Made by a program: the position numbers and the translations under genes. From Octopus sinensis (lineage: Eukaryota): DNA of 64,000 nt. Under the pieces are notes generated by a model. That model was not told where the DNA came from. It made no database searches and saw nothing but the letters and a program-made list of their open reading frames with translations. How positions within the stretch are numbered: position 1 is the stretch's first letter; each line of letters opens with the position of its first letter. Shown piece by piece: positions 2,682-53,439 of the stretch. The stretch is from positions 16,864,001 to 16,928,000 of the forward strand of contig NC_043016.1 in the NCBI RefSeq assembly GCF_006345805.1, in the 5' to 3' direction.

Positions 2682-2853
2682 TTATAATTAGGATTCAGCA
2701 AAGATTTGCTTTAACCACATACCGAAGTTTAGAAATAGCAGCCAAAGAACCTTAGCTATTTTCTTATGGTAGAAGAAATAGCTAAGGTTCTTTGGCTGCT
2801 ATTTCTAAACTTCGGTATGTGGGAAAGCAAATCTTTGCTGACCCTAATTATAA
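2682..2853. repeat. Fold-back palindrome, ~83-bp arms
   Basis: 2682-2764 is the near reverse complement of 2771-2853; same repeat family as 3875-3965. Confidence 0.9.
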
Positions 2854-3001
2854 TTACACACGTAATTATAAAATATTACCTAAGTTTACCGAAAATGGTC
2901 TTTTTTCATGCCGAATTCTACTTGGTAAAATTATTGATTACTAGTTAATTAATTGATTTTAACCTTTATTATTATTGAAATATATATATATAAACAAAAT
3001 G

Positions 3002-3340
3002 TGCAGGAGTAGGTGTGTGGTAAGTATCTTACTTTCCAACCAAATGGTTCCGGTTGAGCCCCACGGCGTGGTACCTTCGGCATGCGCCTTTTCCTATTGC
3101 CTTGGGCCAAATAAAGCCGAACAAAATGGGTTTAGTAGACGGAACTGATATACATGTTTGTGTCTCGCTTGACAACCGATGCTGGTGCATTTACGTCCCC
3201 GTAACTTGGTAGTTCAGCGCAAAACGGTTAGAAGAAATAAGTACTAGGTTTATAAAGAATAATTCCTGGGGTCGATTTTCTCGAATAGAAGCGATGCTCC
3301 AGCATGGCCGCAGTCAAATGACTGAAACGAGTAAGAGTAG
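3002..3340 (+). mobile_element. tRNA-derived SINE, full length
   Basis: A/B-box-like head, family core, 3' tail gatgctccagcatggccgcagtcaaatgactgaaac. Confidence 0.85.
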
Positions 3341-3479
3341 GATGTGTGTGTTTGTGTGTATATATACATGTATGCATATTATATGAGTGTGTATATATAA
3401 ATATGTATATGTATATATGTGCGTGTCTATGTACATATATGTGTGTATATAGACGTGTTTATACATTAAATATATACAC

Positions 3480-3514
<35 letters not shown>

Positions 3515-3526
3515 ATATATATACAT

Positions 3527-3762
3527 ATCATCATTATTTAACGTCCGTTCTCCATGCTAGCATGGGTTGGACGGTTCAACTGGGGTCTGTGAGGCCAGAT
3601 GGCTGCACCAGGCCCAGTTTGATCTGGCAGTGTTTCTACAGCTGGATGCCCTTCCTAACGCCAGCCACTCCGTGAGTGTAGTGGGTGCTTTTTAAGTGCC
3701 ACCAGCACAGAGGCCAGGCGAGGCTGGCAACGGCCACAATCGGTTGGTGCTTTTTACGTGCC
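3527..3762 (-). mobile_element. RTE-LINE 3' UTR/terminus (solo)
   Basis: Reverse complement of the (GAT)n-tailed 3' end attached to the RTE ORF at 11700-12003. Confidence 0.8.
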
Positions 3763-4040
3763 AATATATATATATGAATAAATATATGTAAATACATATA
3801 TATATATATATATATAAATAAATATATATAAATACATATATATATGAATAAATTAAAAATGCTATAATTATAAGCATAATTATAATTAGGGTTCAGCAAA
3901 ATTTGCTTCACCACATACCAAAATTTAGAAATAGCAGTTAAATACTATTCTACTACCATAAGATATCTCCCAGACAGCAATATCCTACAACTCATGCAGG
4001 CAAAGAGAAAAATATAAGGAATCCACCCGGCTTTGATCAA

Positions 4041-4112
4041 CTATATACGTGTTTGTGGATTAAAGAGATGTAAAGTTTATCCTTCCTCACTTATTTCCAT
4101 CTTCAGTATAAT
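4041..4112 (-). ncRNA. Degenerate type I hammerhead-like motif in an AT-rich repeat (3875-4215)
   Basis: Minus strand reads CTGAAGA-TGGA..TCCA-CAAA-CACGTA-TA; GAAA is mutated to CAAA and stem I is poor. Confidence 0.4.
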
Positions 4113-4243
4113 ATTTCAATTATAAATTTGAGAGCTCTAAAATTAAGATATTCATTTGACCAAGAGCCATCAAATAGACTAATATCCCAAAACAATACTT
4201 CCGAATTTATATTATATTATATTTATATATTGTATATATATGC

Positions 4244-4287
<44 letters not shown>

Positions 4288-4309
4288 ATTATATATATAT
4301 ATTATATAT

Positions 4310-4367
<58 letters not shown>

Positions 4368-4408
4368 CACATATATACATATACAATGTGCACATATATA
4401 AATATACT

Positions 4409-5200
4409 GGGAGTAGTAATCCAAGCGCTGAGGATGAATGTCTTCCAGAGGACCATCATGGTTTCCTTCTCTCTGGTTTTGAATGTTCTCAGGGTCCATC
4501 TGGCCAGTAGTCTGCACTTTGTCGCTATAATGGCAATGTGCACTTGGATATCCAGGTCCTCACTGATTTAGGCTCTGGGATTGTAATTCCCTGTGGACCA
4601 GTGTTACCCTGTAAGTTTCATATACAGTTTTTGATGCTGGTAGCACAGGGCCTGGAATTTTTCAGCATTAAGCTGCATATTATTATCCTCAGCTCATCTG
4701 TAAATTGAGCCCAACTCCTGCTGCAGGTGTGCAACATGGCTGGGGTTCTGTATTTTCTGTGATACTTTTATATCATCTGCATAGCTAGCAAGGGTGGCTC
4801 TCTGGGCAGTTGAGGACATATCTGAGAGGGCCACTATGAAAAGCATTGGCCTCAAGAGGAACACTACTCACTATTTTTGTTTTCATTGAGATGGCTCCAT
4901 TGGCCATTACTGCCTGACTTCTATCTTTCAGGAAGTCATGAAATCACTCTCCAGTTTCTAGCATATAATACCACAATCCACTTTGTCAAAAGCTTTTGCA
5001 AAATCAAGGTATATTACGCTCACATTTCAGATGTTGAGTAACTGCCTCAACACTCAGTCATAATGCTGTAAGAGCTGGGTCAGACATCCCCTACTTGGTT
5101 CAAAGTCATGAATGTCTTCCAGAGGACCAACACTCAGCAAATTATTTTCTTCAAGGAATGCGATTAGCTTCCCTCTGACTATCCGTTCCATGACTTTGCT
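4409..5200 (-). mobile_element. CR1-group LINE, RT fragment (decayed)
   Basis: YLDFAKAFD at ~4986-5014; collinear with 1-751 and 5740-7475. Confidence 0.85.
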
Positions 5201-5556
5201 GCTGTGTGAAGAAAGAGAGATAGGCCTATATAGTTTTTGGCATCTGCTCAGCTAACCCCTTTATGGATTGGGCATATCAAGGTCTCTTTCATTCCTTTGT
5301 TGTTTTACCCTTGCTATCAATATATATATATATGTATAAATATATATATATGTATAAATATATATATATATTATATATATATATCATCATCATCATCATT
5401 TAGCGTCTGCTTTCCATGCTAGCATGGGTTGGACGGTTCAACTGGGGTCTGTGAAGCCGTGAGTGTAGTGGGTGCTTTTTACGTGCCATATATATTAAAT
5501 ATAGATATATATAAATATAGATATATATATAAATGTATATATATATATAATATATA

Positions 5557-5596
<40 letters not shown>

Positions 5597-5619
5597 GTAT
5601 TATATATATAATATAATAA

Positions 5620-5650
<31 letters not shown>

Positions 5651-5739
5651 TGTATATATATATAATATATATATAAATATATATATATATTATATATATA
5701 AATGTATATATGAATATAATATATATATAATATATATAT

Positions 5740-7475
5740 ATCGACCACATCGACCACATCGACCACATCGACCACATAGACATAACAGAGAGGGATGTAA
5801 TATCTGCCATAGAAGAAATGAGAATAAACTCAGCTGCTGCCCAGATGGATTCCCAGCAGTCCTCCTAAAAACATGCCGGCATGCCCTAGCGGGACCACTG
5901 AGATGCTCTTCAGTGGTTCCTTGGCTAACGGTAAACTGCCCAGGGCGCTAAAAGAAGGCACCATATGCCCTATCCACAAAGGAGGGAGTAGAGCAGGAGG
6001 CCAAAACCTACAGGCCAGTCTCCCTGACGTCACACATAAGTAAGGTCATGGAACGAATCATCAGAAAAAACTGATCACGTTCCTCGAAGAAACTAACCGT
6101 CTCACTGACACAACAGCATGGCTTTCGCCCAGGAAGAAGCTGCCTTACGCAGCTGTTCAACACTACGACTGGTTACTGAAACAACTACTGGATCGCTCAC
6201 AGGTGGATGTGGTATATCTCGACTTTGCGAAGGCCTTTGACAAAGTCGACCACGGAGTGATATGTCACAAATTACTCAGACTCGGCATAACAGGAAAAGT
6301 AGTGAGTGGATACATGACTTCCTGAAGGACAGAACCAGATGGTTGCAGCCAATGAGCCCTCTCGGGAAAGACACCAATAGCAAGCGGGGGTGGCCACAGG
6401 GCACAGTCTTGGGACCCTTGCTGTTTTTGGTGGCGCTCTCTGACATGCCCTTGTAGCACAAACAACATCCCATCCCTCACTAGCTATGCTGATGACACAA
6501 AGGTAGCACAGGCAATTAAAAACCCCAGCTGATGCTGACCTTTTACAACAAGATCTGGATGCCATATACAAATGGGCTGAAGAAAACAACATGCAATTTA
6601 ATGCTGGTAATTTCAAGCCTTACATATCAAGCTGTAACACATATACATTACAACACAACTATACTGGTCCAGGAGGGATCGAAATCCCAGTATCGAAATC
6701 AATACGGGACCTGGGGATAGACATGATGACGATGGCATCTTTTTCTTCACACATCGCGAAGGTGGCGACAATGTGCAGACGACTCACTGGCTGGATCCTG
6801 AGGACATTCCGGACAAGAGACTGCGAGACCATGTTGACACTATGGAGGACATTTGTCCTAAGCCGCCTAGACTACTGCTCCCAACTGTGGTCACCGCATA
6901 GTGTCAAACTAACCACAGAGCTTGAGACAATCCAAAGACATTTCACCCAGAGGATTTCCACCATGAAAGAAAAAAACTATTGGGAGAGGCTTAGGGAACT
7001 CAATTTGTACTCCTTGGAACGAAGACGAGAGAGATATGCAGTGATATACATATGGAAATCCTGGAGGGACTAGCACCACAATTTTGGAATTGAGAGCTGT
7101 TCCAATCCCGTACAGGACGTCACTGTGTGGTGCCCAAAGGTCCCGTCTTCCACATCCAGGGTAAGGAGCGGATACTGTAATAGCCTGGGGTTCAGGGGCC
7201 CTCAGCTTTTCAACAAACTGCCAAGAAAACTAAGAGATCTACATGATGCGGATGTGGACATTTTCAAAAAACATCTAGACAAGCTGCTTTCCGGGATCCC
7301 AGATGAACCCACTGCAAGGTACGAAGGTAACCTAAGGGCAGCAGCTACAAACTCTCTCTTAGATCAGTGGCCAGCCACGGCAACTGGACTTAGAGAGGGT
7401 AGCAACAAGGGCGGTGCCCCAGCATGGCCTCAGCCGGATGGCTGAACAAGTAAAAGAGTAAAAGAGTAAAAGAGT
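5740..7475 (+). mobile_element. 5'-truncated CR1-group LINE with intact 3' end
   Basis: YRPVSLT (~6012), YLDFAKAFDKVDHG (~6214), YADD (6485-6496), ORF 6591-7073 (SRLDYCSQLWSP..SLERRRERY), 3' stem-loop at 7430-7445 and (GAGTAAAA)3 tail. Confidence 0.92.
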
Positions 7476-7852
7476 ATATATATATTATAATGATATATAT
7501 ATATAATATATAAAAAATATATAATAAATATATATATATATATATAAATGTATATATATATATAAATATATAATATAAAATATATATATATATATAATAT
7601 ATAATATAAATATATATATATATATATATATAAATGTATAATATAATAAATATATAATATAAATATATATATATATATATATATAAATGTATATATAATA
7701 TAATATATAATATAAATATATATATATAATATATTATAAATATATATATATATATAATATTAATATATAATATAATATATATATAATATATAATATAAAT
7801 ATATATATATATATAATATATAATATAAATATATATATATATATAATATATA

Positions 7853-7884
<32 letters not shown>

Positions 7885-7972
7885 CTATATATAAATATAT
7901 ATTATATATATATATATAAAATATATATATATAAATATATATATAAATATATATATTTATATTATATATAAA

Positions 7973-8125
7973 TTGATTGATTGATTGATTGATTGATTCT
8001 AGTTTCAGCTTATGAGCTGGTGCCATGCTGGGGCACCGCCATTTGGTGTTGCTACTTGGTTTCACTTCATGGAGGCTTCTAGCAACTGCTATTTGGTGCA
8101 TGAGAGAGTTCGATGCAGCTGCATA
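7973..8125 (-). mobile_element. 3' terminus of a CR1-group LINE with (CAAT)n tail
   Basis: Minus strand ggcggtgccccagcatggcaccagctcataagctgaaactag matches the 3' end at 7410-7450. Confidence 0.7.
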
Positions 8126-8444
8126 TATAAAAGAATAATATATAATATAATATATATATTTATATTATATATAAATATATATATAAATATATAATATAAA
8201 TATATATATTTATATTATATATAAATATATATTTATATTATATATAAATATATAATATATATATATATCAATATATATATATATATATAATACATATATA
8301 TATAAATAAACACAAAGTAATTTAGGGATTATGGGTACAACCTACTAAGGGATAGTATTTATCCATATATGAATATATATATATATATATTGATAGTAAA
8401 GGTAAGACAACAAAAGAATGAAAGAGACCTTGATATGCCCAATC

Positions 8445-9025
8445 CATATCAAACTCCATTCTTCACCAAGTGCCCATATTAGAGGAGGTTCTTAGTAATA
8501 ACAGTGTAGCACAAAACGGCGGTGCACCAGCATGGCCGCAGCTTGAGCTGAAACTAGAGAGAAAATAAAATATATTATAAATTTTTTTTTCTCTTGTTTC
8601 AGCTCAGGGCTGCGGCCATGCTAATGCACCACCGTTTTGTGGTACACTGTTATTACTAAGAACCTCCTCTAATATGTGGCACTTGGTGAAGAATGGAGTT
8701 TGATATAGCTACCCTCATTTGCACCTCTTGCTGTGAGGTAGGTTCATCTGGGACTCTCGACAGGAAGATGTCCAGCTTTGATTTAAAAACCCCTACATCT
8801 TCTTTGTGCAAGTTCCTCAGACTCTTTGGGAGAATATTAAAAAGCTGTGGGCCCTTGAAGTAACTGGTCCTGAAGCATGATGGCATTGCTGGGATCTTTG
8901 GGCCTATGCAGTGTCGTCCCGTTCTGGCATTGTTGTAGCTTTCAATGCCAAAATTTGGCACAATTCCTTCCAGGATCTTCCAGACATATATTACTGCATA
9001 CCTCTCCAGGGAGTAGAGTCTTAGC
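8445..9025 (-). mobile_element. CR1-group LINE 3' fragment (8585-9025) plus an inverted copy of its last ~125 bp (8445-8570)
   Basis: ORF 8656-8961 (FKGPQLFNILPKSLRNL..KSKLDIFLSRVPDEP); the two arms are reverse complements, tail-to-tail. Confidence 0.85.
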
Positions 9026-9029
9026 TGTG

Positions 9030-9176: not shown

Positions 9177-9207
<31 letters not shown>

Positions 9208-9572: not shown

Positions 9573-9607
<35 letters not shown>

Positions 9608-17026: not shown

Positions 17027-17120
17027 ATAGTTAATACAAACATAAAAACACAAAGAGAAAACACAACAACGCGAGGACGTGGAACAAATATAGTTATTGG
17101 ATGCTCAGGAAAGAAGGAGG

Positions 17121-17156
17121 GTTTTTACGATTCAAGTGGAGCTCTTCGTCAGAAAC
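17121..17156 (-). ncRNA. Degenerate minimal hammerhead-like motif
   Basis: Minus strand GTTT-CTGACGA-A-GAG ctcca CTT-GAAT-CG-TA-AAA; GAAA is mutated to GAAT. Confidence 0.4.
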
Positions 17157-17475
17157 ATAGGAAAAGGAAAGATCCAGAGAGGGAAGACGGAGAAAAAAAA
17201 TCGCCAACGGTACACACGCGGTCACACATATATACACATTATGTATATATGTTTATATATAATACAAAATAGAAAAGGAGAAATACATCGAAATCAATAT
17301 CAATTACCAGATAATACTCAATCCATACTTTGTAACTATGTTTATATATATATATATATATATTATATTATATATATATATATAGTATTAATATGCATGT
17401 GTGTATATATGTATGCATATATGTGTGTATGTATATATATGTGTTCGTGTGTGTGTGTGTGTTTTCATCTTATTC

Positions 17476-17511
17476 CTTTCTGATGAAGAACATAGACTTG
17501 AAACGTAAAAG
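17476..17511 (+). ncRNA. Degenerate minimal hammerhead-like motif
   Basis: CTTT-CTGATGA-A-gaacatagactt-GAAA-CG-TA-AAAG; core and 4-bp stem I intact, stem II decayed. Confidence 0.5.
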
Positions 17512-17639
17512 ACTTTTCCATTTTTCTCAAGCGTTAAACTAATACACCTGCTTGTTGTTCCTACACCTGTCTTTTGTTTTTGTTTTTCTTTTTGTAAATT
17601 TGAACTACACACACACACACACACACACACACTTAAGAT

Positions 17640-24776: not shown

Positions 24777-24942
24777 AATCCAAACGGGAAACAAAAAAAA
24801 CACAACAATGGAACATTACACACACATATATATATACATATATATATAATATATATATATATATATACTATATATATATATATATAATATTATTAGTGAA
24901 TTGAAGAAATGGAGTTGAACGAAGATTGAACAGAAATCGTTT

Positions 24943-25033
24943 TATTTCATTCTACACGTGTTTCGAAAGGCACAATTTACCAAATTCCAATTGAATAATG
25001 GACCATATTGTGTCTTTCTCTTCAGGAAGAATA
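24943..25033 (-). ncRNA. Type I hammerhead ribozyme (mirror copy)
   Basis: Reverse complement of 25199-25291; one base missing in stem I and one in loop II. Confidence 0.75.
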
Positions 25034-25198
25034 GGAATCCGTTGGAATAAACAAAAACAGAACAGAGGCGGAGCAAAACAAATCGAACTAGGCTCCTAAG
25101 AGCCCATGGCCAAACTCTTGGCCATGGGCTCTTAGGAGCCTAGTTCGATTTGTTTTGCTCCGCCTCTGTTCTGTTTTTGTTTATTCCAACGGATTTCC

Positions 25199-25291
25199 TA
25201 TTTCTTCCTGAAGAGAAAGACACAATATGGTCTCATTATTCAATTGGAATTTGGTAAATTGTGCCTTTCGAAACACGTGTAGAATGAAATA
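25199..25291 (+). ncRNA. Type I hammerhead ribozyme, PLE/retrozyme type
   Basis: Stem I TATTTCTTC/GAA(T)GAAATA; core CTGAAGA 25208-14; stem II GAAAGaCACAAT/ATTGTGcCTTTC; GAAA 25270-73; palindromic ACACGTGT stem III; GUA cleavage triplet ending at 25281. Confidence 0.85.
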
Positions 25292-25521
25292 AACGATTTC
25301 TGTTCAATCTTCGTTCAACTCCATTTCTTCAATTCACTAATAATATTAAAATTCAATTATCCGCACCAACGCACGGTTGCAACACATATGGTTGTACCTC
25401 CAACCGTGCTGTCTTCTGCTGTGATTTTTGCTACCAAGGTAGCGGTTAAACTTTGATTATCTTAATCTGCAACAAGATTATTCATCTTTCTATTTCACAT
25501 TATATATATATATACATATAT

Positions 25522-25797: not shown

Positions 25798-25990
25798 CAA
25801 CAATGCAGGGTGGACTATTATAATAACCGTTATAATTTAATTATTCATAGTCACTGCTATAATATTTCAGAATATAAAATTCCTTCTTCAGATATTCTTA
25901 GATGGAGTCACAGCTATATTCTGAATATTATATCAGACTATGAATAATTAAATTATAACAGTTATTATAATATTCCACCCTGCATTGTTG
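25798..25990. repeat. Inverted repeat (~78-bp arms, 38-bp spacer) overlapping a hammerhead core on the minus strand
   Basis: 25798-25876 pairs with 25915-25990; minus strand 25891-25865 reads CTGAAGA-A-GGAAT tttat ATTCT-GAAA. Confidence 0.85.
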
Positions 25991-26190: not shown

Positions 26191-26379
26191 CTTCTCAGAA
26201 ATTTACTAACTGTAACAATCTTTCTGTGCAATAGATAGCAAGATAGATAGATAGATGAGTGTATAGCTACATATGTAGCTGTGTAAAGAAGTACTGATCT
26301 CTAACCTGTAAAACCAAATTCAGCATACCAAATTCAGACTGGAACTTTGTACAGAATCCAGCTTACCAGTTCCAGTCAA

Positions 26380-28085
26380 ACTATCTAACCAATGCCAACT
26401 TCATGACACCTCCTTCTATTGCCCTCTGCCCTCCAACCCCATGCCTAACTACCAACAGACTGTATCCTCCGCTATCCATGACCTCATTTCCTTCTCCCAT
26501 CTTCCTCTCACTGCCTCCAACCTCATTGTCCACACTCCACACACACCCACTATTTACTTCCTTCCCAAAATCCACAAGCCCAACAACCCTGACCACCCCA
26601 TCATCTTTGCCTGCAACTGTTCCACGGAATTGATCTCTAAATACCTCGACTGTGTCTTTGACTCCCTAGTGGCTTCCCTCTCCTCACACATCCACAACAC
26701 TGACCATGCTCTCCATCTCTTTAACTCTTTTTCCTTTCCTTCTGGACTCTAAATTTCTGTCCACTCTTGATATCAAGATTTTATATACTGTGATCCCACA
26801 CAACGAAGGACTTCTTGCTCTGATACACTTTCTAGACCTTCGACCTGACCCTCCAACCTGACACCTCCACACTTCTTTGTTTGGCCAAGCTTGTTCTCCC
26901 CTTCAACTGCTTTTTGTACACAGGGGATTTTTGCCAACAGTTCTCGGGAGTAGCCATGGGAATGAGAATGGGCTCCAACTATGCGAACTTGTTTGTTGGC
27001 TATGTTGAGGCCCAAATATTCTCACAATTCATTGGTCACACTCCCAAACTATATGGTTGTTATATCAATGACTGTATTGTCGAGACCTCTCTCTCCCATG
27101 AACAACTAAACTCCTTCCTCTCTTTTGTCCAATCCTTCCATCCTGTGCTCGAATTCTCCTGCAGTATCTCTAACTCTTCTGTTGAGTTTCTCGACACTTC
27201 TGTCAGTATACACCACTCCACTCTCACTAACTCCGTCCACTACAAACACACTCACACTCCTACCTTAACTTCTTCTCTTCCCACCCTACCCACTCTATCT
27301 CCTTCTCCCAATCCCTCTGTCTGTGCAGGCTCTGCAGTGACAACCATGACTTTGAAATCCAGTCTCAACTCATGACTCACCACTTCATCCTACCACTATC
27401 CACACTGCCCTTGCCAGGGCATGATCCGTGGACCGTGCCTCTGCCCATTCTCCCTGCACCCGCCCCACCATTGCCCATCTCCCGTTTCCCCTCACCTACC
27501 ACCCCTCTGCTCCGCCCCTCCAACATGCCATTCTCTGAGCCTTTCGGTGACTTTAGTCCAACCCCTCTACCTCGCACATCTTCCCCAACCTACACCTTCC
27601 CTCCTTCAAATGAACCCATAACCTGTGTTACCTTATGGTCCACAGTTTTTTCCCTAACTCTACTGCCCAGCCTGGCTCGTTTTCCTGCTCCTACCCACAC
27701 TGCTGCACCTGCCCCTACCTCTCCAACAATACCATCCTCATAGGCACCCATCATTGTCCATATCACATAACCGACTACTTTACCTGCACTTCTCGTAACG
27801 TCATTTACCGCATCTCCTGCTCTCTCTCTGCCCTTTCCTGTATATTGGTCATATGGGACTGTTTCGCAGAGCACCTCCAAGGCATCAGACTCGGCAATGA
27901 CACCTGGTCCCATGCCATTTGTGGTCTACCGGTCATTCACTACAACATCTGTCTGTATTTAGACTGTCTTTGCACAGGGCCATCCAGACTCCTGCCTTTG
28001 CCGTGAACTGGAATTAATCTTCTCTCTGCACTCTTTTGTGCCACAAAGGCTTAACCCCACTCTCTTCATCTGACATCTACCTCAC
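26380..28085 (+). mobile_element. Penelope-like element, RT plus GIY-YIG (pseudogenised)
   Basis: YFLPKIHKPNNP..PIIFAC, LYTVIPH, GVAMGMRMGSNYANLFVG, YIND (for YIDD), FLDTSV, FTCTSRNVIYRISCS; many frameshifts. Confidence 0.92.
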
Positions 28086-28835: not shown

Positions 28836-29301
28836 TCCCTTTCTTTCAAACTATTTTCTAATCATTTGCCATGTTGGACAGCTGAAATGTACAAATTTTT
28901 AATTCTCTCTCTGTTTATCTTCTCTTATTCCATTCTTTTAAAGAGCATGGCTTGAAACATAAAAGACTATTTAATTTTTTCAAACGTCAAACTAATACAC
29001 TTGCATGTTGTTCATGTGTGTATGTATGTATATATATATATATATATATATACAAATTGAGATAGGGGTTGTAAATGCAACCCTGAAGTACCCAACAAAG
29101 TTAATACATAAATGTTAAGGATTGCGATGCAATCAATTCATTTACTGTATTATATGGGCAAAGGTAAAATGATTTACCACAAATTACTAATTCAAGATAA
29201 GAAAATGGAGAAATACATCTAAATCAAATATCAATTACCAGATAATACTCAATCACATACTTTATTAAACCACCACATAAGAGACTGTAGGGTTACATAT
29301 A

Positions 29302-29647
29302 AAAAGCAGAACAAATCAGTGTACATACAGTAGTGTACATAAAAAAGTGTACATAAAAGAGTAATATATGTAGACTGATTTATATTACATAATCTCCGAA
29401 GAGGCTTATGATATTTTGTAAATGTCTCATTTATATATATATTGACCTACCATAAAAGGCTAATATTGGTAAAATGAGACATACTTATCTACATGGCCGA
29501 AACAGCTGTAAGATGTAATCTATACTTATATTTATATTTACTTATATTTATATTCTCTTTTATATATATTCTACTTATACATCATTACTCTTTTATGTAC
29601 ACTTTTTTATGTACACTACTGTATGTACACTGATTTGTTCTGCTTTT
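29302..29647. repeat. Perfect 64-bp inverted repeats (29302-29365 / 29584-29647) enclosing a hammerhead
   Basis: Base-by-base reverse-complement identity. Confidence 0.95.
29384..29519 (+). ncRNA. Type I hammerhead ribozyme with a U4-to-C core variant
   Basis: Stem I ATTAC(ata)ATCT/AGATGTAAT; core CCGAAGA 29396-402; stem II GGCT/GGCC extended by ATGTCTCATTT/AAATGAGACAT; GAAA 29499-502; palindromic ACAGCTGT; GUA ending at 29510. Confidence 0.78.
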
Positions 29648-31901
29648 GAGACTGAGGATTGTAATATGATGCCACAGGGTAGAGGACTTTAGGCATGCTT
29701 GGACTTCATCTGCTCTAGTGTCTTTCGGAATGACAAGAAGAGTTTGCCTGAAATCACCTGAAAACAGAAGCGTTACACCTCCCATTGGAGCCTGACAGTC
29801 TCGGATGTCTTTCAGGGCTCTATCTAATGCTTCCAAAGCTCCCTTGTGAGCCATAGTGCACTCATCCCAGACAATTAGATGACACATTTTAAGTACTTGT
29901 CCCTGATCTGAGCTTTTGTTGATGTTGCATAAAGGCATTTCGGATGCTGCTAAATTGAGAGGGAGTTTAAAAATTGAGTGTGCTGTCCTGCCACCGGGTA
30001 ACAAAGTAGCTGCAATGCCAGAGGAGGCTACAGCTACTGCAATGTCCTGATGCTGCCTAACTTCTGCAAGGAGAAGCTTTGTAATAAATGTTTTTCCTGT
30101 CCCTCCAGGAGCATCGAGGAAGAAGATTCGTCCCTTGCGTTGGCGTACACTGCTAAAAATAGTTCTGTAGGCCTGCAGCTGCTCCGGAAGTAATTTAGGC
30201 TCATTTTCAACAATGTACTTTGAAAGCGCTTGAGTGTCGTAGGTTGTTTCACGAATGACAGCAGTGGGAAGGTTATTTGACCCTGACCTGAATGTTTGTG
30301 GCAGGCCATACGTCGACAATTCATTTCCATCCAGTTTAGCAATTCTGTCTTTAGCCAGGTTGTCTCTATATTTGAGCCATAGAGTGGCCGGATCACACAG
30401 TTCGCATGCCTGTAGTAATACTGCAAATAGTGCCCTGAGACTTTTAGGTGATTGTGATAAAGCAGCTTCTCCTAAAGTTGCATCCCATTGTGCACCATCT
30501 TCTAACAGACCTTGTCGATAGCAGGCTTCTCTGTATGTTGTGCAGACGTGTCCATGAACGGTTTTTAGTGCCTGGAAAGACGTTGGCCCTCTGACCTTAT
30601 GCAGTAGTAGACGAAGATAGAAGCACTCTTGTTGAGTGGGATGCACTGTGTATACTCGCCCAAGGCAAGTGTGAAACTTAATGCCAGGGTATCCATGAAC
30701 ATTTTGACCTGCTTTCCGTGGGGGCCCATTTTTTTCCATTCCAAGTGTAGTACGATGGAATCTGTGGATATAGCAAGGTTTGAGCGAATGGATCCACTTG
30801 ACAAAGCTCGAAGAATGCAGTGAGTGTGCTATCCCTTGGTTCCTCTGCCAACAGAGAAGCATTAGCATCGGTGAAGTACACTCTTTGACCATTTTCCAGG
30901 TGCGCTGCAAGCTGTTGAATGGCGGGGTGTCGTTGGTGAATTGGAAAGCCAAAGATGCGCCAGAAAGCCTCGTTGCTACTTATGTACCGTCCCACCTGAT
31001 AATGCGTCACCTCATCCTGGCAGTATTCTTGTTGAAGTCCAAACATTGCAGCGTCGGAACCCTTGTTTACATATTTGCAAACGTACTTGATGGATTTAAC
31101 GGAGTTGCAAAACTCAACGTTGATGTGGGCATTGAAAGTCTTTGACAAGAGTGAGCAGTATGGAACAATCCATCTATTATCAATATCGTGCTGTCCGATA
31201 GTTGCTGTGAAACCTCCGTCTTCTGGTTTTCTGCGTCTATATGATGGATACCCATCAGCACCTGTCTGAGTTACTTGTAGGAACCTCCTTGGAAATCTTT
31301 TTGAACATATGCTGTCCTTCAAGCATGGTGAGTTTATGTTGAATCCACGCCCACATGGACCATGTTTGCTTTAACTATTTCGTATAGTTCTTTGTCTAAA
31401 GCTGGATCAGGAAGCTCTGCAGAGATTATGTTGTCGATGCCATTAGAATTGATCTACGCTGAGAGCCAAAGCAGGATATGAGCATGTGAAAGGCCCCTTT
31501 TTTGCCACTCGATTGTGTACATGTCACATTGTATGGGCCCAAAGACTTGCCCTTTTTGTATGAACTCCATGAGAGAGATTAACTTCAGATGGAAAACTCG
31601 GGCGTTGAGATTCCGGTTCGAATGTAAGGCAGGTTTGAAAGTGTTCCCAACAGTTATTAGTTGTAGTGGTAGAGTGTTTATGCCGAATATGTACGTATGC
31701 ATGTATATATATATATGTATGTATGCATGTATATATATATATGTATGTATGCCTGTATATATGTACAAAATCCACTGAGAAGGCTTTGGTTGGTCTGAGG
31801 CTATAGCAGAAGACACATGCCAAGTCACCACACAGTGGGACTGAACCCAGGACCATGTGTTTGGAACGTAGTTTGTTACCACACAGCCACATCTGCCCTT
31901 A

Positions 31902-44613: not shown

Positions 44614-44631
44614 TATATATATATATATATG

Positions 44632-45746
44632 AATTAGAGATAAAACCACTATTAGGCAACTCAAACAGTGATAGACATAAACCAATACATGAATAACAAA
44701 TAATATAAATATAATTAATATAATATATCAAAATACTAGCAGTATCGCCTGGCGTTGTTCAGGTTTGTTTCGACTGTTTAAGATTGGAATTTTTGAAAAG
44801 TAAACATTTTGCATTATGTAGCTTGTTATTCTCTTTAAGTGTACATTTTTCTGGTTGAAATACACAGAAAAATGGTGACCCCAGTACGCAAACTTACACT
44901 TAATTTATCGACACCAAAAGGATAAAAGGCAAAGTCACCATTTTTTGGTGTATTTCAACCAGAAAAATGTTCACTTAAAAGTAAAAATTATGCATTATGT
45001 AGCTTGTTATTCTTTTCGGGCTAGCAGTGATGATCAAAAATCCGGCCTGCTAAAATTTGGTTAAAGTGATTCAAACTGCAGACTCAATGCAAAATGGTCA
45101 CATTTAATTCAAAGCGTTAAAAATATTATGAAAACAATTGGTATGTGTTCACAAAGTCCAAACGATTAATACGAAAAAACCCTCCAGGCTACATCCCAAA
45201 AATTAATTTCTTTGCCGAATTTCTACAATGTTTACGGCAATTCGTTTTTATATCTTGATTTTTTATTTTTCATGCAATTTACGCATGCTTGCACGCATGG
45301 TGAACACACTTCACGTCAAACAGCTGACTGAGTAAAGTTCACTATTCAATGCATGGGATAAGGCCTAAACAAACACATCAATTTTTGCACTTGCGAGATG
45401 AATTTTGGAACAGAAATAGCGCAGTTCAATTTTCATTGAAATACACCGAAAAACGGTGACTTTGCCTTTTATCCTTTTGGTGTCGATAAATTAAGTGTAA
45501 GTTTGCGTACTGGGGTCACCATTTTTCTGTGTATTTCAACCAGAAAAATGTACACTTAAAGAGAATAACAATTTTTACTTTTCAAAAATTCCAATGCTAA
45601 ACGGTCGAAACAAATCTGAACAACGCCAGGCGATACTGCTAGTATTTTGATATATTATATTAATTATATTATATTATTTGTTATTCATGTATTGGTTATG
45701 TCTATCACTGTTTGAGTTGCATAATAGTGGTTTTATCTAATTCATA
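44632..45746. repeat. Inverted duplication (~310-330-bp arms, 44632-44959 / 45435-45746)
   Basis: Arms are reverse complements containing a Helitron 3' end and its flank. Confidence 0.9.
45015..45642 (+). mobile_element. Non-autonomous Helitron, 3' portion
   Basis: 3' end caacgccaggcgatactgCTAG|T (CTAG 45639-42), homologous to 37975-38000. Confidence 0.65.
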
Positions 45747-45822
45747 TTTTATATATTCATACTGTGAAATTTGATTTAATACTAAATCTAATTTTTTCCT
45801 GTAAGTTTGGAGCCATACTCCC

Positions 45823-48929: not shown

Positions 48930-50150
48930 ATGTGCTCAGTGTAAGCTGTGGGCACACAAAAGGTGCAGCAACATCAAAGGAAGGTTGACAGAGAAATTAA
49001 CTTTGTATGTGAAAGATGCATAGGCATAATAAATGCTGAATATGTGTGGAAAATAGACTCTATCAACTGCCAGGGGGGCACACTAGAGGTAGTAGATAGC
49101 TTCAGGTATCTAGGTGACCAGGTTAGTAGTGGAGGTGGAAGTTCTGAGATCGTAGCTGTGAGAATAAGATTAGGTTGGGCAAAGTTCAGAGAGCTCCTAC
49201 CCCTGCTGGCAACAAAGGGAGTCTCTCTCCAAGTGAAAGGCAGATTGTTTTATGCCTGTTATAACATGGGTTATAACAGCCGAGGACATGTGAAGGCTTG
49301 AGAGAAATGAAGCTGGTATGCTTCGCTGGATGTGCAATGTCAGTGGGCATGTACAACATAGTATGTGTCTTGAGAGAAAAATTGGGCACCAGGGGCATCA
49401 GATGTGGTGTGCAAGAGAGACGAATGTGCTGGTATGATCATATATGGATGAGGACAGCTGTGTAAAGAAGTGCTGATCTCTAACTGTGGAGGGAACCTAT
49501 GATAGAGGTAAACCCAAGAAGAAATGGGACGAGGTGGTGAAGCATGATCTTCAAACTTTGAGCGTCACAGAGACAATGACTAGTGACCAAGACCTTTGGT
49601 GATGTGCCCTGCTTAAGAGGAGTCGTGAAGCTAAGTGCACCAGTGCTGGTGGCACATAAGAAAATCAACCTTGAACATTGGGCCTCACAGAGGTAAATTG
49701 GCTGAGTCCCATTCGATTGTTGGGCCTTACAGAGGCATAGTGGCTGAGTGCCTTTTGAGCATTGGGCCTCAGGGAGGCAAAGTGGCTGAGTTTCTTTCGA
49801 GTGTTGGGCCTCAGGGAGGCAAAGATGCCGAGTTCTTTTCAAGTGTTGAGCCTTACAGAGGCAATGACCAAGACCTTTGGCATCATGTCATGCTTGAGAA
49901 GAAGACCCATCAAGCCAAACAAAATCACAGTCATGGCTGATACCGGTGTCATGCAAATGACATCCATGCTGGTGGCACATAAAAACACCCATTACACTCT
50001 CAGAGTGGTTGACATTTGGAAGGGTATCCAGTCATAGAAAACCATGCCAAATGAGACTGGAGCCTGGTGCAGCCTTCCAGCATGCCAGCCCAGTCAAACC
50101 ATCCAACCCATACCAGCATGGACAACAGATGTTAAATAATGATGATGATG
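48930..50150 (+). mobile_element. RTE-clade LINE, 3' fragment
   Basis: DSFRYLGDQVSSGGG..RLGWAKFRELLPLL; 3' UTR with ~42-bp tandem repeats and a (GAT)n tail. Confidence 0.88.
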
Positions 50151-50220
50151 AATATAATTAGTACCAGATTCAAATAAGTGCTAGATGTGATTTGACCTCC
50201 TAGAATCCATATATATATAT

Positions 50221-50283
<63 letters not shown>

Positions 50284-50630
50284 ACAAAATAGGGAGACAA
50301 TTCCATGTAGAAATCAATTCAGTCTCAATTTGGTTCTGACCACACATAGTATTAATTCCAGTTGAAATACCGAATGTAGTAGGTCCTGAGAAAATGTAAT
50401 AAGGTAGACAATGAAAACAGATATAATAATCCTTTATTTATTTATCCATATGAATAAATAATTTTCCAACCTATGTTTCTGCTTAATTACTAAGAGTATA
50501 CCTATTTTAATTAGTTGATTAAATAAGTAATTAAATAATTGTTAATACAATGCATTTAGTAAAAAAGCTTCTTAACATATAAATATGTATGTATATATAT
50601 ATATACACACACACACACATATATATATGT

Positions 50631-53254
50631 CATCATCATCATCATCATCATTTAGCATCCGCTTTCCATGCTAGCATGGGTTCAACTGGGGTCTGGGAAG
50701 CCAGAAGGCTGCATCAGGCCCAGTCTGATCTGGCAATGTTTCTACGGCTGGATGCCCTTCCTAACGCCAACCACTCCGTGAGTGTAGTGGGTGCTTTTTA
50801 CTTGCCACCGGCACAGATGCCAGACGAGGCTGGCAAACGGCCACGATCGGATGGTGCTTTTTACGTGCCACCAGCACGAGGCCAGTTGGGGCAGTTGCGT
50901 GACACCGGTATCAGCCATGACTGTGATTTTGTTTGGCTTGATGGGTCTTCTTCTCAAGCATGACATGATGCCACCAGCACGAGGCCAGTCAGATGGTTCT
51001 CTTATGTGCCACCGGCACTGGTATCACAATTGCAATTTCCATTGATTTTTGATCGATTTCGATTCTCACTTGCCTCAACAGGTCTTCACAATTAGAGTTT
51101 TGTGTCCCCAGAAGGAAAGGTATGCATAAGTGGACTGGCACAACCCGGGTTATGGTCTCACTTGTCCTGCCGGGTCTTCTCACGCACAGCACACTTCCAA
51201 AGGTCTCGGTCTCTAGTCATTTCCTTGGTGAGACCTAAAGTTCGAAGGTCGTGCTTCACCACCTCATCCCAGGTCTTCCTGGGTCTACCTCTTCCACAGG
51301 TTCCCTCAACCGCTAGGGTGTGGCACTTTTTCACACAACTATCTTCATCCATTCTCACCACGTGTCCATACCAGCGTAGACGTCTCTCTCTTGCACACCA
51401 CAACTGACATTATACATCCATTGGAGCATACTGGCTTCATTTCTTGCGAGCTTACGCATATCCTCAGCAGTCATGGCCCATGTTTCACTGCCATGTAGCA
51501 TGGCTGTTCGTACACATGCATCATACAGTCTGCCTTTTACTCTGTGCGAGAGGCCTTTTGTCACCAGCAGAGGTAAGAGCTCTCTGAACTTTGCCCAAGC
51601 TATTCTTACTCTAGCAGTTACACTTTCAGCACACCCGCACCTGCTACTGACTTGGTCACCTAGGTAACAGAAGCTATCAACTATTTCTAGTTTTTCTCCC
51701 TGGAATGTGGCAGAAGTTGGTCTCAGAGCATTTTCAGTGTTTATTGCTCCTGAGCATCTGCCACATACAAAAACTATCTTCCTAGTTAGCCTTCCTTTGA
51801 CATTGCTGCACCTCTTATGTGTCCATAGCTTACACTTGATGCATCTTATAGAGTTTCTACCTACACCTTTTCTACAGATCGAGCAGGGCCATCTACCTGA
51901 AAGCGTTTGTGATTTGTCTACCTTCCTACTTATTTGGACTTTGGTTTTAGCTAGGTTGACTCTAAGGCCCTTCGATTCTAATCCTTGCTTCCACACCTGA
52001 AACTTCTCCTCCAGTTCTGATAGTGACTCAGCAGTTAGAGCAAGGTCATCAGCATAGAGGAGCTCCCAGGGGCATCCTGTCTTGAATTCCTCTGTTATTG
52101 TCTGGAGGACTATGATAAATAGGAGGGGACTGAGGACTGAGCCTTGGTGGACCCCTACCTCTACCCGGAATTCTTCACTGTACTCATTGCCACCCTCACC
52201 TTACTAGCGGCGTCCCTGTACATGGCTCGCACAGCTCTCACTAACCATTCATCTATCCCTAGTTTCCTCATTGACCACCAGATAAGGGATCAGGGGACCC
52301 TGTCAAAGGCTTTCTCCATGTCAACAAAAGCCAGGTACAGGGGCTTATCTTTGGCTAGGTATTTCTCCTGCAGCTGCCTTACCAGGAATATAGCATCAGT
52401 GGTACTTTTCTCTGGCATAAACCCAAACTGCATCTCATCTAAACTAACTCTCTCTCTAATTAGTTGGGCTATGACCCTCTCCGTAACCTTCATTACCTGA
52501 TCCAACAGCTTGATACCTCTGTAATTATTTGTATCTAGGGTATCACCTTTACCTTTGTAGCAGTTGACTATTATGCTGCTACACCAGTCATTGGGTATGA
52601 CTCCTTCATGTATCACCTGATTAACTATACAGGTGACTAGGCTATAGCCGACACTACCAGATATTTTGAGCATCTCTGCAGTGATTCCTGATGGGCCTGG
52701 GGCCTTCCCTGTCTTCATGCTTCTAATTGCCTTAAGTACCAAGGAACTATCAACTCGGATAGCTGGTCCCTCAGTTGGGTCAACATTCGGCAGACTCTCT
52801 TTATCCCATTCATTTTCCTTATTCAGCAGCCTTTCATAATGGTGTCTCCAAACCTCTCTCTTTGCAGCCTCATTTAGCGCAAGTGAACCATCATCCATGC
52901 GAACACATTTCTCTCCTACCACATCACGATTCTCTCTCACACACTGTCTTGCAACACGAAACACCTCAACTCTTTGGTCCTCACGGCGCAGAACATTGGC
53001 AAATTTTTTCTTATCCGCTTCCCCTCTGACTAAATAGACCTGTCTCCTAGCTTCCCCTTTGGCAGTCTGATACAATTCCCTGCTACCACCGTTCTTCCAG
53101 TCCTTCTAAGCCTGTCTCTTTTCTCTAATAGCCCTGTCTACAACATTGTTCCACCACCACGTTATTTGGGGTCGAGAGGGGACTTTGCACCAGCCACAGA
53201 TCTGGTCAGTGGCTTTCAGCAGGTTGTCCCTTAGAAACGTCCAGTTGTCTTCTA

Positions 53255-53256
<2 letters not shown>
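50631..53256 (-). mobile_element. RTE-clade LINE, ~2.6 kb, 5'-truncated, relatively young
   Basis: ORFs 52290-53075 (GKAPGPSGI..YRGIKLL..QFGF..FVDMEKAFDRVP), HQGSVLSPLLF, LLYADDL (~52045), 51355-51996, RLRWYGHV; 3' UTR and (GAT)n tail. Confidence 0.95.
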
Positions 53257-53319
<63 letters not shown>

Positions 53320-53321
<2 letters not shown>

Positions 53322-53439
53322 TTATTTTATAGAAGGACTAGAACTGTTTCATTCAAATGAAATCATCAGGAAGCTTCCTGATGATTTCATTTGAATGAAA
53401 CAGTTCTAGTCCTGTAGAAGCTCCTTCTATAAAATAAAT
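53320..53439. repeat. Fold-back palindrome, perfect 40-bp arms with no spacer (53334-53413), extended past a 12-nt deletion
   Basis: Centre AAG|CTT at 53373/53374. Confidence 0.95.
53369..53424 (+). ncRNA. Type I hammerhead ribozyme candidate
   Basis: Stem I GG(A)AGCTTC/GAAGCTCC; CTGATGA 53378-84; weak stem II TTC/GAA with U-U closing; GAAA 53397-400; stem III CAG-ttctagtc-CTG; GUA ending at 53416. Confidence 0.72.

What the first reader, a model, noticed from the sequence alone, without database searches (positions are those of the whole stretch)
2682..53439. Candidate system: hammerhead-bearing repeat units capped by 5' fold-back mirrors
Seen: at least eight hammerhead or hammerhead-like motifs from several dissimilar sequence families in 64 kb (4041, 17121, 17476, 24943/25199, 25865, 28934, 29384, 53369). 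Five fold-back duplications involve these families (2682, 24885, 25798, 29302, 53320). In all five the mirror arm copies downstream sequence and lies 5' of the ribozyme-sense strand; in four it abuts a (TA)n tract. Established: Penelope-like elements and non-LTR retrozymes carry minimal type I hammerheads with palindromic stem III in their terminal repeats, and PLE termini can be inverted. Inference: these are solo PLE terminal units made by reverse transcription with cDNA snap-back at the truncation point. A read-through RNA would form long dsRNA that, where the mirror covers the ribozyme, masks it and could feed ADAR editing (extensive in coleoid cephalopods) or small-RNA pathways. I cannot tell whether these families are already catalogued.
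Basis: partly seen in the sequence, partly recalled or inferred. Interest (0 to 1): 0.88.

Follow-up and report, generated by a model that had tools for sequence, protein, structure and literature searches.

The report
Hammerhead-bearing Penelope retroelement ends, folded back
These octopus-type repeats are most likely short, 5'-truncated tail pieces of Penelope-like retrotransposons, each carrying a mostly decayed hammerhead ribozyme motif and often inserted as a head-to-head mirror pair; this layout is already known for these elements.

Summary
All five fold-backs are real and lie at the stated coordinates. In each, the element's 3' ends face outward and the 5' truncation point sits at the centre.

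The hammerhead claim is overstated. Only the 24885-25348 palindrome carries a statistically solid type I hammerhead, one per arm. Its core and three helices are complete. No match appeared in 1500 shuffles, but the Rfam score is only 14.8 bits against a cut-off of 34. The other motifs are degenerate relics. The 17476/28934/17121 family becomes a convincing minimal hammerhead only when an Octopus bimaculoides copy is added.

Pfam missed a decayed Penelope-like element (RT plus GIY-YIG) at 26.3-28.0 kb. A related element on a public contig (L008) shows the whole proposed anatomy:
- a hammerhead-like motif in its 3' UTR;
- a head-to-head inverted 5'-truncated partner;
- a solo 150-nt terminal unit capped by a 65-nt mirror over the motif.

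The link of families A-E to a Penelope master, the snap-back step and the dsRNA/ADAR idea remain untested. I rate this a new member of a known kind, of moderate-low interest.

The parts
24885..25348 (.). Fold-back A: near-perfect palindrome with arms 24885-25114 and 25117-25348 and a 2-4 nt loop. It consists of two head-to-head copies of one unit, with 3' ends outward. The left end abuts a (TA)n tract.
   Evidence: As RNA it folds into a 228-bp hairpin of -398 kcal/mol.
25202..25287 (+). Type I hammerhead candidate in the right arm of A. Core CUGAAGA is at 25208-25214. Helix II is 5+6 bp with G10.1-C11.1 and a 31-nt loop. GAAA starts at 25270. Helix III is the palindrome ACACGUGU. H17 is A at 25281. 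Helix I is 3 bp, a bulge, then 6 bp.
   Evidence: RF00163, 14.8 bits; 0 of 1500 shuffles
24946..25031 (-). Mirror copy of the same hammerhead in the left arm of A (core at 25025-25019).
2684..2857 (.). Fold-back B: two head-to-head copies of the 3'-terminal ~85 nt of family B. Neither arm contains a hammerhead. The left end abuts a (TA)n tract.
3872..4215 (-). Longer solo copy of family B. It has the same 3' terminus (..CCTAATTATAATTA, at 3872). A hammerhead-like relic lies at about 4035-4112: CUGAAGA, a UGGA/UCCA helix II, then CAAACACGUAUA, so G12 is changed to C.
   Evidence: no Rfam hammerhead hit
29302..29647 (+). Unit C. The left arm 29302-29372 is an inverted copy of the 3'-terminal 29578-29647. 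The interior carries a hammerhead-like motif at 29384-29520: CCGAAGA, a 96-nt helix II region, then GAAACAGCUGUA. The right edge truncates a Helitron exactly at 29647/29648.
   Evidence: no Rfam hammerhead hit
25798..25990 (-). Fold-back D: arms about 80 bp, 83% identical. An AU-rich hammerhead-like motif lies on the minus strand (core 25891-25885, GAAAUAU at 25868-25862). It starts 3 nt from the centre of symmetry. The right end abuts a (TG)(TA)n tract.
   Evidence: no Rfam hammerhead hit
53320..53439 (+). Fold-back E. The hammerhead-like motif at 53369-53424 has core CUGAUGA at 53378. Helix II is weak, with U.U at 10.1/11.1. Helix III is ACAG/CUGU. Helix I is 6+2 bp and exists only in the right arm, because of a 12-nt stretch absent from the left arm. 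The left end abuts a (TA)n tract.
17455..17608 (+). Unit F: a 150-nt solo unit that begins 25 nt before CUGAUGA (17480). The family consensus is a minimal hammerhead.
17030..17240 (-). Unit G: a diverged relative of F (about 64% identical) with motif CUGACGA..GAAUCGUA. Its 3' end abuts a (TA)n tract. It lies head-to-head with F, 215 bp away.
28887..29013 (+). Unit F2: a decayed copy of F with the 5' core lost (CUUUUAA). It lies 0.9 kb downstream of the Penelope-like endonuclease stop codon, on the same strand.
26312..28003 (+). Decayed, frame-shifted, 5'-truncated Penelope-like element. It contains the LPKIHK region, RT motifs, a CX4CxxC linker and the start of a GIY-YIG endonuclease.
   Evidence: Pfam alone finds nothing

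Best explanation
The units are 5'-truncated copies of the hammerhead-bearing 3'-terminal region of Penelope-like retroelements, or of short non-autonomous elements that borrow the Penelope RT and GIY-YIG endonuclease.

Proposed mechanism:
1. The endonuclease nicks an AT-rich target, often a (TA)n tract.
2. The RT primes on the AT-rich 3' end of the element's RNA and copies it for 70-340 nt.
3. The enzyme then switches template onto the nascent cDNA (snap-back at a small self-complementary site), or a second cDNA is primed from the other nick.
4. The result is an inverted duplication with both element 3' ends outward and the truncation point at the centre.

The hammerheads are inherited from the parent element's terminal repeat and are mutated in most copies. 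In a read-through transcript of a palindromic copy, the ribozyme would be buried in a long perfect hairpin.

Shown: the structures, the motif in A, the shared 3' ends with variable 5' ends, the Penelope-like remnant in the window, and the identical anatomy on L008.

Inferred: the nicking site, the template switch, any cleavage activity and any RNA-level consequence.
For: 1. A carries a complete type I hammerhead with G10.1-C11.1, a long helix II and a palindromic helix III. These are the traits listed for Penelope hammerheads. The chance expectation is below 0.001 per window.
2. All five fold-backs have their 3' ends outward.
3. B's two arms and its solo copy end within 2-4 nt of the same terminus, while their 5' extents differ by more than 250 nt. 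The F, F2 and G copies and an O. bimaculoides copy show the same pattern.
4. The symmetric arms with 0-6 nt loops in A, B and E fit a snap-back.
5. A Penelope-like RT, CX4CxxC linker and GIY-YIG remnant lies at 26.3-28.0 kb. All 10 full-length relatives tested have RVT_1 plus GIY-YIG.
6. L008 carries a Penelope-like element with an intact endonuclease and the motif CCGACGA-A-GGGC-UAAC-GCUC-GAAACGUC starting 129 nt after the stop codon. It also has a head-to-head 5'-truncated partner (arms 97-100% identical) and a solo 150-nt tail capped by a 65-nt mirror with a 1-nt loop.
7. The F family aligns in register with that 3' UTR. They share GCUCGAAACGUCA and a downstream CTTGTTG block; 3 of 1000 shuffles reach the score of the O. 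bimaculoides copy.
8. The literature reports inverted 5'-truncated partners, a (TA)n bias and hammerheads in the terminal repeats. Octopus vulgaris has 31 recently active Penelope-like families.
Against: - No Penelope-like element whose 3' end matches families A-E was found. The window's own copy has no recognisable hammerhead in the 130 nt after its stop codon, and F2 lies 0.9 kb further on, behind microsatellite sequence.
- Rfam scores A below threshold and does not report B, C, D or E at all.
- E and D are structurally compatible with TA-flanked miniature DNA transposons. A pogo-type transposase fragment and a long-TIR element with TA flanks are in the same window.
- C's mirror copies the distal 71 nt rather than the sequence at the junction, which a simple snap-back does not produce.
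- No clear target-site duplications were found.
- About 64 kb sampled from O. bimaculoides and Argonauta showed almost no such palindromes, so how general the pattern is remains unknown.
- The F-to-L008 similarity is significant for only one of the four copies.
Confidence: 0.68

Rival explanations
1. The fold-backs are miniature inverted-repeat (MITE or foldback) derivatives of cut-and-paste DNA transposons that insert at TA. On this view the hammerhead-like strings are chance matches in AT-rich palindromes.
For: - The window holds a 1.14-kb element with 342-bp terminal inverted repeats and TA flanks next to a (TA)n tract (44617-45756).
- It also holds DDE_1/HTH_Tnp_Tc5 transposase fragments.
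- A and E can be read as TA | element | TA.
- With one core mismatch allowed, 18 hammerhead-like loci occur in the window.
- Octopus has active Tc1-mariner elements and MITEs.
Against: - The hammerhead in A is far beyond chance: 0 of 1500 shuffles, and core-only matches occur at 0.003 per window.
- Family B has a one-ended 340-nt copy that shares only the 3' terminus.
- The F family consists of one-ended units with variable 5' ends.
- C and D have no TA flanks.
- The same capped-unit structure occurs on L008, where the unit is demonstrably the 3' UTR of a Penelope-like element.
Confidence: 0.14
2. The palindromes arose at the DNA level after insertion. Possible routes are hairpin formation or replication template switching near fragile (TA)n tracts, or chance neighbouring insertions in opposite orientation.
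For: - (TA)n tracts abut four of the five fold-backs.
- The window also has a SINE-related palindrome with the opposite geometry, 3' ends inward (8446-8706).
- Several SINE pairs lie in inverted orientation.
Against: - Both outer edges of B coincide, within 2-4 nt, with the family's own 3' terminus. A DNA-level duplication of arbitrary extent would not respect that boundary.
- The (TA)n tracts lie at the outer edges, not at the centres of symmetry.
- All five fold-backs show the same polarity.
- The arms abut with loops of 0-6 nt in A, B and E.
Confidence: 0.08
3. This rival accepts a Penelope origin but proposes a different mechanism. The mirror arm comes from a second, independent cDNA primed at the other strand's nick (twin priming), not from snap-back of one cDNA.
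For: - C, and the full-length pair on L008, are asymmetric. In C one arm is 71 nt against a sense copy of at least 275 nt. On L008 the plus copy extends 328 nt further than its partner.
- Published descriptions speak of an adjacent inverted 5'-truncated copy, without implying equal arms.
Against: A, B, E and the L008 solo unit have equal-length arms meeting at loops of 0-6 nt. Two independent cDNAs would have to stop at the same nucleotide to produce that.
Confidence: 0.3
4. The palindromes are assembly artefacts.
For: The arms of A differ almost only by 1-nt indels, mostly in A/T runs, the typical long-read consensus error. The window has no Ns and has long microsatellites, so it probably comes from a long-read assembly.
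Against: - Each palindrome is short and internal, and has unique sequence on at least one side (the other often a (TA)n tract).
- The arms of B, D and E have real substitutions and indels.
- An equivalent structure is present in an unrelated public assembly (L008).
Confidence: 0.03

Closest known systems
Canonical endonuclease-positive Penelope-like elements (Penelope/Poseidon, Neptune, Nematis) and their insertion structures (Evgen'ev and Arkhipova 2005; Craig et al. 2021, PMC8557442)
   Same: - Strong 5' truncation.
- An inverted 5'-truncated copy abutting the 5' end.
- A bias for (TA)n targets, linked to a CX2-5CxxC motif before the GIY-YIG domain. The window's copy has CX4CxxC.
- Hammerhead motifs near the 3' end.
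   Different: The window's units are solos of 70-340 nt without an ORF. Three of them are fully symmetric hairpins. No partial tandem (pseudo-LTR) is seen in the window. Their master elements have not been identified.
Minimal type I hammerheads of metazoan Penelope-like elements (Cervera and de la Pena 2014, PMC4209133); Rfam RF00163
   Same: - Type I topology.
- G10.1-C11.1.
- An enlarged helix II and a short helix I.
- A palindromic 15.2-16.2/loop 3, implying action as a dimer.
- An unpaired base after A9 in the F family, D and L008.
   Different: In A, helix II carries a 31-nt loop (51 nt inserted relative to the Rfam model), so the Rfam score is 14.8 against a cut-off of 34. Several copies have changes in the catalytic core. 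A CCGANGA variant (C at position 4) recurs in C and in all L008 copies. No cleavage data exist.
Non-LTR retrozymes of animals (Cervera and de la Pena 2020, PMC7229834; Li et al. 2026 preprint, 10.64898/2026.07.22.740005)
   Same: Short (150-450 nt), AT-rich, non-coding units with a type I hammerhead. They are thought to derive from the terminal repeats of Penelope-like elements.
   Different: Retrozymes are defined by head-to-tail tandem arrays that yield circular RNAs. These units are dispersed solos or head-to-head pairs, and TRF and self-BLAST find no tandem copies.
Palindromic miniature DNA transposons such as mariner-derived MADE1-type elements (comparison from my own knowledge)
   Same: Short, near-perfect hairpin-forming palindromes next to TA.
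   Different: Those elements are two transposon ends joined by internal deletion and have fixed TA duplications. Here at least families B and F exist as one-ended 5'-truncated copies, and A carries a ribozyme motif known in animals only from retroelements.

Membership tests
Hammerhead ribozyme, type I (RF00163 / minimal hammerhead of Penelope-like elements) | Conserved core CUGANGA ... GAAA ... U-H in type I order | tested here: met
   Met in full by both arms of A, and by D, E and F. Not met by B (G12->C), C (U4->C), G (A14->U) or F2 (three changes).
Hammerhead ribozyme, type I (RF00163 / minimal hammerhead of Penelope-like elements) | Three helices closing directly on the core | tested here: inconclusive
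   A has helix I of 3+6 bp, helix II of 5+6 bp and a palindromic helix III; helices I and II appear in the minimum-energy fold. In E, helix II has U.U at its base and the minimum-energy fold is not a hammerhead. D's helices contain only A-U and G.U pairs. In F, helix II is lost in the window copy but intact (GAGC/GCUC) in the O. bimaculoides copy.
Hammerhead ribozyme, type I (RF00163 / minimal hammerhead of Penelope-like elements) | G10.1-C11.1 pair and a palindromic 15.2-16.2/loop 3 (criteria of Cervera and de la Pena 2014) | tested here: met
   A has G-C and ACACGUGU. C has G-C and ACAGCUGU. The F-family consensus and L008 have G-C and ACGU. D has G.U and AUAU.
Hammerhead ribozyme, type I (RF00163 / minimal hammerhead of Penelope-like elements) | Score at or above Rfam's gathering cut-off | tested here: not met
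   There are no hits at gathering score in the window or in six loci. A scores 14.8 bits against 34. B, C, D and E give no hammerhead hit at E <= 10.
Hammerhead ribozyme, type I (RF00163 / minimal hammerhead of Penelope-like elements) | Self-cleavage at H17 | not testable with these tools
   This needs in vitro transcription of monomer and dimer constructs.
Penelope-like element: terminal (pseudo-LTR / 3' UTR) unit | An RT plus C-terminal GIY-YIG element present in the same genome | tested here: met
   A decayed copy lies at 26312-28003. It is colinear with P0249 residues 348-460, 504-640 and 766-835. Ten of ten long relatives carry RVT_1 plus GIY-YIG. The literature reports 31 active families in O. 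vulgaris.
Penelope-like element: terminal (pseudo-LTR / 3' UTR) unit | The unit's sequence equals the 3' end of a coding Penelope-like element | tested here: inconclusive
   The F family aligns in register with the 3' UTR of the L008 element, with P about 0.003 for one copy and non-significant scores for the other three. For A-E no master could be retrieved, because no eukaryotic DNA collection was searchable.
Penelope-like element: terminal (pseudo-LTR / 3' UTR) unit | A 5'-truncation series with a common 3' end | tested here: met
   Shown for B with three copies and for F/G with four copies, including O. bimaculoides. A, C, D and E are single loci and could not be tested.
Penelope-like element: terminal (pseudo-LTR / 3' UTR) unit | An inverted 5'-truncated copy abutting the 5' end | tested here: met
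   Seen in five of five fold-backs, with 3' ends outward. The same is seen on L008 for a full copy and for a solo unit.
Penelope-like element: terminal (pseudo-LTR / 3' UTR) unit | Insertion bias for (TA)n microsatellites | tested here: inconclusive
   Four of 10 fold-back ends lie within 10 bp of a tract, against a 9.7% background; my binomial estimate is P about 0.01. SINE ends reach 19%, and a DNA transposon also abuts a tract.
Non-LTR retrozyme | Head-to-tail tandem repeats of the hammerhead unit | tested here: not met
   TRF and plus-strand self-BLAST find no tandem copies of any unit.
MITE / foldback DNA transposon | Two-ended copies with a fixed target-site duplication | tested here: inconclusive
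   TA flanks are possible for A and E but cannot be told apart from the palindrome itself. There are none for C and D. B and F exist as one-ended copies.

The most novel reading that the evidence does not exclude
In D, E and the L008 solo unit the centre of the fold-back lies only 3-6 nt upstream of the hammerhead core. The folded ribozyme region, or its cDNA complement, may therefore itself make the Penelope RT stop and switch onto the nascent cDNA. That would make the hammerhead a determinant of 'hairpin solo' formation. Cephalopod genomes would then be seeded with perfect long-hairpin transcription units that could feed ADAR editing, endogenous siRNA production or new miRNA-like hairpins.
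Probability: 0.1. Interest if true: 0.6.

Novelty: new member of a known kind. Interest (0 to 1): 0.35.

Why it matters
If the reading holds, octopus genomes carry several uncatalogued families of short Penelope-derived units with hammerhead motifs. Repeat annotators probably file these as 'unknown' or as MITEs. Recognising them would improve cephalopod repeat libraries.

It would also give natural examples of the poorly understood Penelope integration step that produces inverted structures. The symmetric hairpin solos are the simplest products of that step, so they are useful for inferring its mechanism.

The proposed RNA-level consequences (a masked ribozyme, long dsRNA) are predictions only.

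Tried and rejected
- Rfam at gathering score on the window and on six fetched loci gave nothing. At the E-value threshold, the whole-window list is dominated by generic hairpin and miRNA models matching the palindromes and microsatellites.
- My first strict descriptor missed A because helix II exceeded my length limit. I corrected this.
- A scan of metagenome contigs for A's hammerhead found nothing.
- Exact-protein look-ups of the Helitron ORF found nothing.
- A search with a LINE RT piece returned no same-species loci; the best hit was 59% identical, from Argonauta and unknown sources.
- The Pfam census of 113 ORF pieces suggested there was no Penelope-like element. This was wrong: Pfam misses the decayed copy even at E <= 10. 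It was found by reading translations and confirmed with HMMER.
- I considered that C's arm contains Helitron coding sequence, because of a 'KSRTNQ' versus 'KTNMR' resemblance. I rejected this: nucleotide homology to O. bimaculoides Helitron copies stops exactly at 29648/29649.
- A possible 13-21 bp direct repeat flanking C (GAGACTG.AGG.TT) is weak, with P about 0.06. No flanking repeats were found for A, B, D or E.
- Extended similarity among A, B and C beyond the hammerhead core: none.
- The Penelope-like element on L005/L006 (P0249) has no recognisable hammerhead in its 3' flank.
- L009 gave nothing clear.
- The retrozyme reading (tandem arrays) was rejected.

Full report
CONTEXT. The window is AT-rich eukaryotic DNA with no Ns. 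It has 144 merged (TA)n tracts, tRNA-type SINEs, LINE RT fragments, a Helitron and a pogo-type transposase fragment. Its Helitron and LINE copies are about 90% identical at the nucleotide level to copies in the Octopus bimaculoides chromosome assembly, and its SINEs are about 80% identical. The source is therefore an Octopus genome.

FOLD-BACKS.
- A (24885-25348): 230-bp arms, 97.7% identical. They differ by five single-base indels, mostly in A/T runs, plus one mismatch at the centre, and meet at a 2-4 nt loop.
- B (2684-2857): arms of about 85 bp.
- E (53320-53439): an 80-bp perfect core, plus a 12-nt stretch present only in the right arm.
- D (25798-25990): 80-bp arms at 83% identity around an asymmetric centre.
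- C (29302-29647): different in kind. Only the terminal 63-71 bp are mirrored, at 97-100% identity, around a 205-bp non-palindromic interior.

HAMMERHEADS. Rfam reports none at its curated threshold.

A is the only robust case. A structural descriptor finds a complete type I motif on each arm, facing outward. It reads CUGAAGA, then a helix II of 5+6 bp closed by G10.1-C11.1 with a 31-nt loop, then GAA, the palindromic helix III ACACGUGU, A17, and a helix I of 3 bp, a bulge and 6 bp. When the 141 nt around it are searched alone, RF00163 aligns end to end with every core base matched. The score is only 14.8 bits, because the model penalises the 51-nt insertion. A descriptor that demands CUGANGAG ... 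CGAAAC, a palindrome, then GU-H, plus helices I and II, gave no hit in 1500 dinucleotide shuffles; the two core blocks alone occur 0.003 times per window. I accept this as a genuine hammerhead by descent.

The other motifs are weaker.
- D and E retain the core, but D's helices contain only A-U and G.U pairs and E has a U.U-based helix II. Neither gets any Rfam hammerhead hit at E <= 10.
- B has G12->C, C has U4->C, the 17121 unit has A14->U, and 28934 has lost its 5' core.
- Allowing one core mismatch yields 18 loci in the window, most of them unrelated. Such matches carry no weight by themselves.

The 17476/28934/17121 family is rescued by comparison. A fourth copy from O. bimaculoides (L003) aligns over about 150 nt, and the consensus is CUGAUGA-A-GAGC-RUA-GCUY-GAAACGU-H-AAAG. 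That is a textbook minimal hammerhead, with the unpaired base after A9. These features match those listed for Penelope hammerheads by Cervera and de la Pena.

POLARITY AND TRUNCATION. Taking the strand that carries the motif as sense, all five fold-backs have the element's 3' ends outward and the 5' break at the centre.

For B this rests on a third copy (3872-4215, minus strand). That copy continues more than 250 nt further 5', and all three copies end within 2-4 nt of ..CCTAATTATAATTA. The F/G family likewise shares a 3' end and varies at the 5' end. A shared 3' end with variable 5' ends is the signature of target-primed reverse transcription, not of cut-and-paste transposition.

The outer edges of B coincide with the family terminus on both sides. 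This argues that the duplication was made at or before integration, not later at the DNA level.

LINK TO PENELOPE-LIKE ELEMENTS. A Pfam census of 113 ORF pieces showed no GIY-YIG domain, but reading the translations revealed a decayed element on the plus strand at 26.3-28.0 kb.
- A full HMMER search with its 179-residue RT piece found 3959 relatives. The ten long ones tested (794-946 residues) all carry RVT_1 followed by a C-terminal GIY-YIG domain.
- The window's three pieces are colinear with one of these relatives, P0249. The colinear stretch includes the CX4CxxC linker, which Craig et al. associate with (TA)n targeting.
- The window therefore does contain a Penelope-like element, though its own 3' UTR shows no hammerhead.

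More telling is contig L008, which carries a relative 51% identical in the RT piece.
- Its endonuclease ORF is intact.
- 129 nt after the stop codon lies the motif CCGACGA-A-GGGC-UAAC-GCUC-GAAACGUC-AGC, which folds with helices I and II.
- The element ends about 140 nt further on.
- The same contig holds a head-to-head, 5'-truncated partner with arms 97-100% identical.
- It also holds a solo copy of the last 150 nt, capped at its 5' end by a 65-nt mirror (97% complementary, 1-nt loop) that covers the motif.

The F family aligns in register with this UTR. They share GCUCGAAACGUCA and a downstream block; 3 of 1000 shuffles reach the score of the O. bimaculoides copy, and the other three copies are not significant.

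(TA)n TRACTS. Four of ten fold-back ends lie within 10 bp of a tract, against 9.7% of positions. My binomial estimate is P about 0.01. SINE ends also reach 19%, and a TA-flanked long-TIR DNA element abuts a tract too. The association is compatible with Penelope targeting but does not diagnose it. The 3' termini of A, B and E are themselves AT-rich, which would allow annealing to a nicked (TA)n tract; this is an inference.

MECHANISM. Equal arms meeting at loops of 0-6 nt (A, B, E and the L008 solo) are what a switch of the RT onto its own nascent cDNA predicts. Unequal arms (C and the L008 full pair) fit a second priming event better. Both may occur.

As RNA, the palindromes would fold into near-perfect hairpins: A at -398 kcal/mol with 228 arm-to-arm pairs. 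That would sequester the ribozyme. This is a prediction only.

RIVALS. A MITE origin remains possible for D and E individually, and cannot be formally excluded for A on structure alone; A's hammerhead is what argues against it. DNA-level palindrome formation and assembly artefacts are unlikely, for the reasons given under each rival. The window also holds one palindrome of opposite polarity, derived from a SINE (8446-8706), so not every hairpin here is Penelope-related.

VERDICT. The families may be uncatalogued; a 2026 O. vulgaris repeat paper mentions Penelope-like elements but no hammerheads or palindromes. I rate this a new member of a known kind.

Noticed in passing
window 26312-28003 (+): A decayed, frame-shifted, 5'-truncated Penelope-like element (LPKIHK region, RT motifs, CX4CxxC linker, start of GIY-YIG).
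   Followed up: yes
L008 4647-4858, 7092-10174: A public contig of unknown animal origin (ENA ERZ26695794) carries a Penelope-like element, its head-to-head inverted partner and a solo 150-nt tail with a 65-nt snap-back mirror. All are embedded in a short-period satellite array (unit about 19-21 nt).
   Followed up: yes
window 29396; L008 4763-4787, 4799-4823, 7158-7182, 10035-10058: The variant 5' core CCGANGA (C instead of U at position 4) occurs in unit C and in all four L008 copies. It may be a lineage-specific natural variant rather than decay.
   Followed up: partly
window 25894, 53373; L008 4793: The centre of the fold-back lies only 3-6 nt upstream of the hammerhead core in D, E and the L008 solo unit. 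In A the distance is 92 nt.
   Followed up: no
window 8446-8706: A 261-bp palindrome (91% identical arms) whose arms share the 3'-end block of a tRNA-type SINE. Its 3' ends point inward, the opposite polarity to the five fold-backs, and it has no hammerhead motif.
   Followed up: partly
window 44617-45756: A 1.14-kb element with 342-bp terminal inverted repeats (91.5% identical) and TA on both flanks, next to a (TA)n tract. It is probably a non-autonomous Tc1/mariner- or pogo-type DNA transposon.
   Followed up: partly
window 29648-31600 (-): A Helitron fragment (Helitron_like_N plus PIF1 helicase), 90-92% identical to O. bimaculoides copies. It is truncated exactly at the outer edge of unit C. 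The remainder of the helicase is not on the other side of C.
   Followed up: yes
window 17260-17331 and 29188-29263: A 72-76 nt segment (91% identical) lies next to an F-type unit at both loci but in permuted order: before F at 17 kb and after F2 at 29 kb. This hints at a composite or partially tandem element.
   Followed up: partly
window 24885-25348: The two arms of A differ by five 1-nt indels, mostly in A/T runs, plus one central mismatch. This is the pattern of long-read consensus errors, so the arms may be identical in the real DNA.
   Followed up: no
window 50900-53250 (-): A 5'-truncated LINE with an RT, a PHD-like zinc finger and an RLRWYGHVVRM-type C-terminus. It ends at the (TA)n tract that also borders fold-back E and is unrelated to the fold-back.
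   Followed up: partly
window 25032-25200, 8449-8703, 53350-53403: Below their thresholds, Rfam miRNA-precursor models (MIR847, MIR839, mir-2851, MIR8001) match these palindromes simply because they are long hairpins. They are not evidence of miRNA genes.
   Followed up: no
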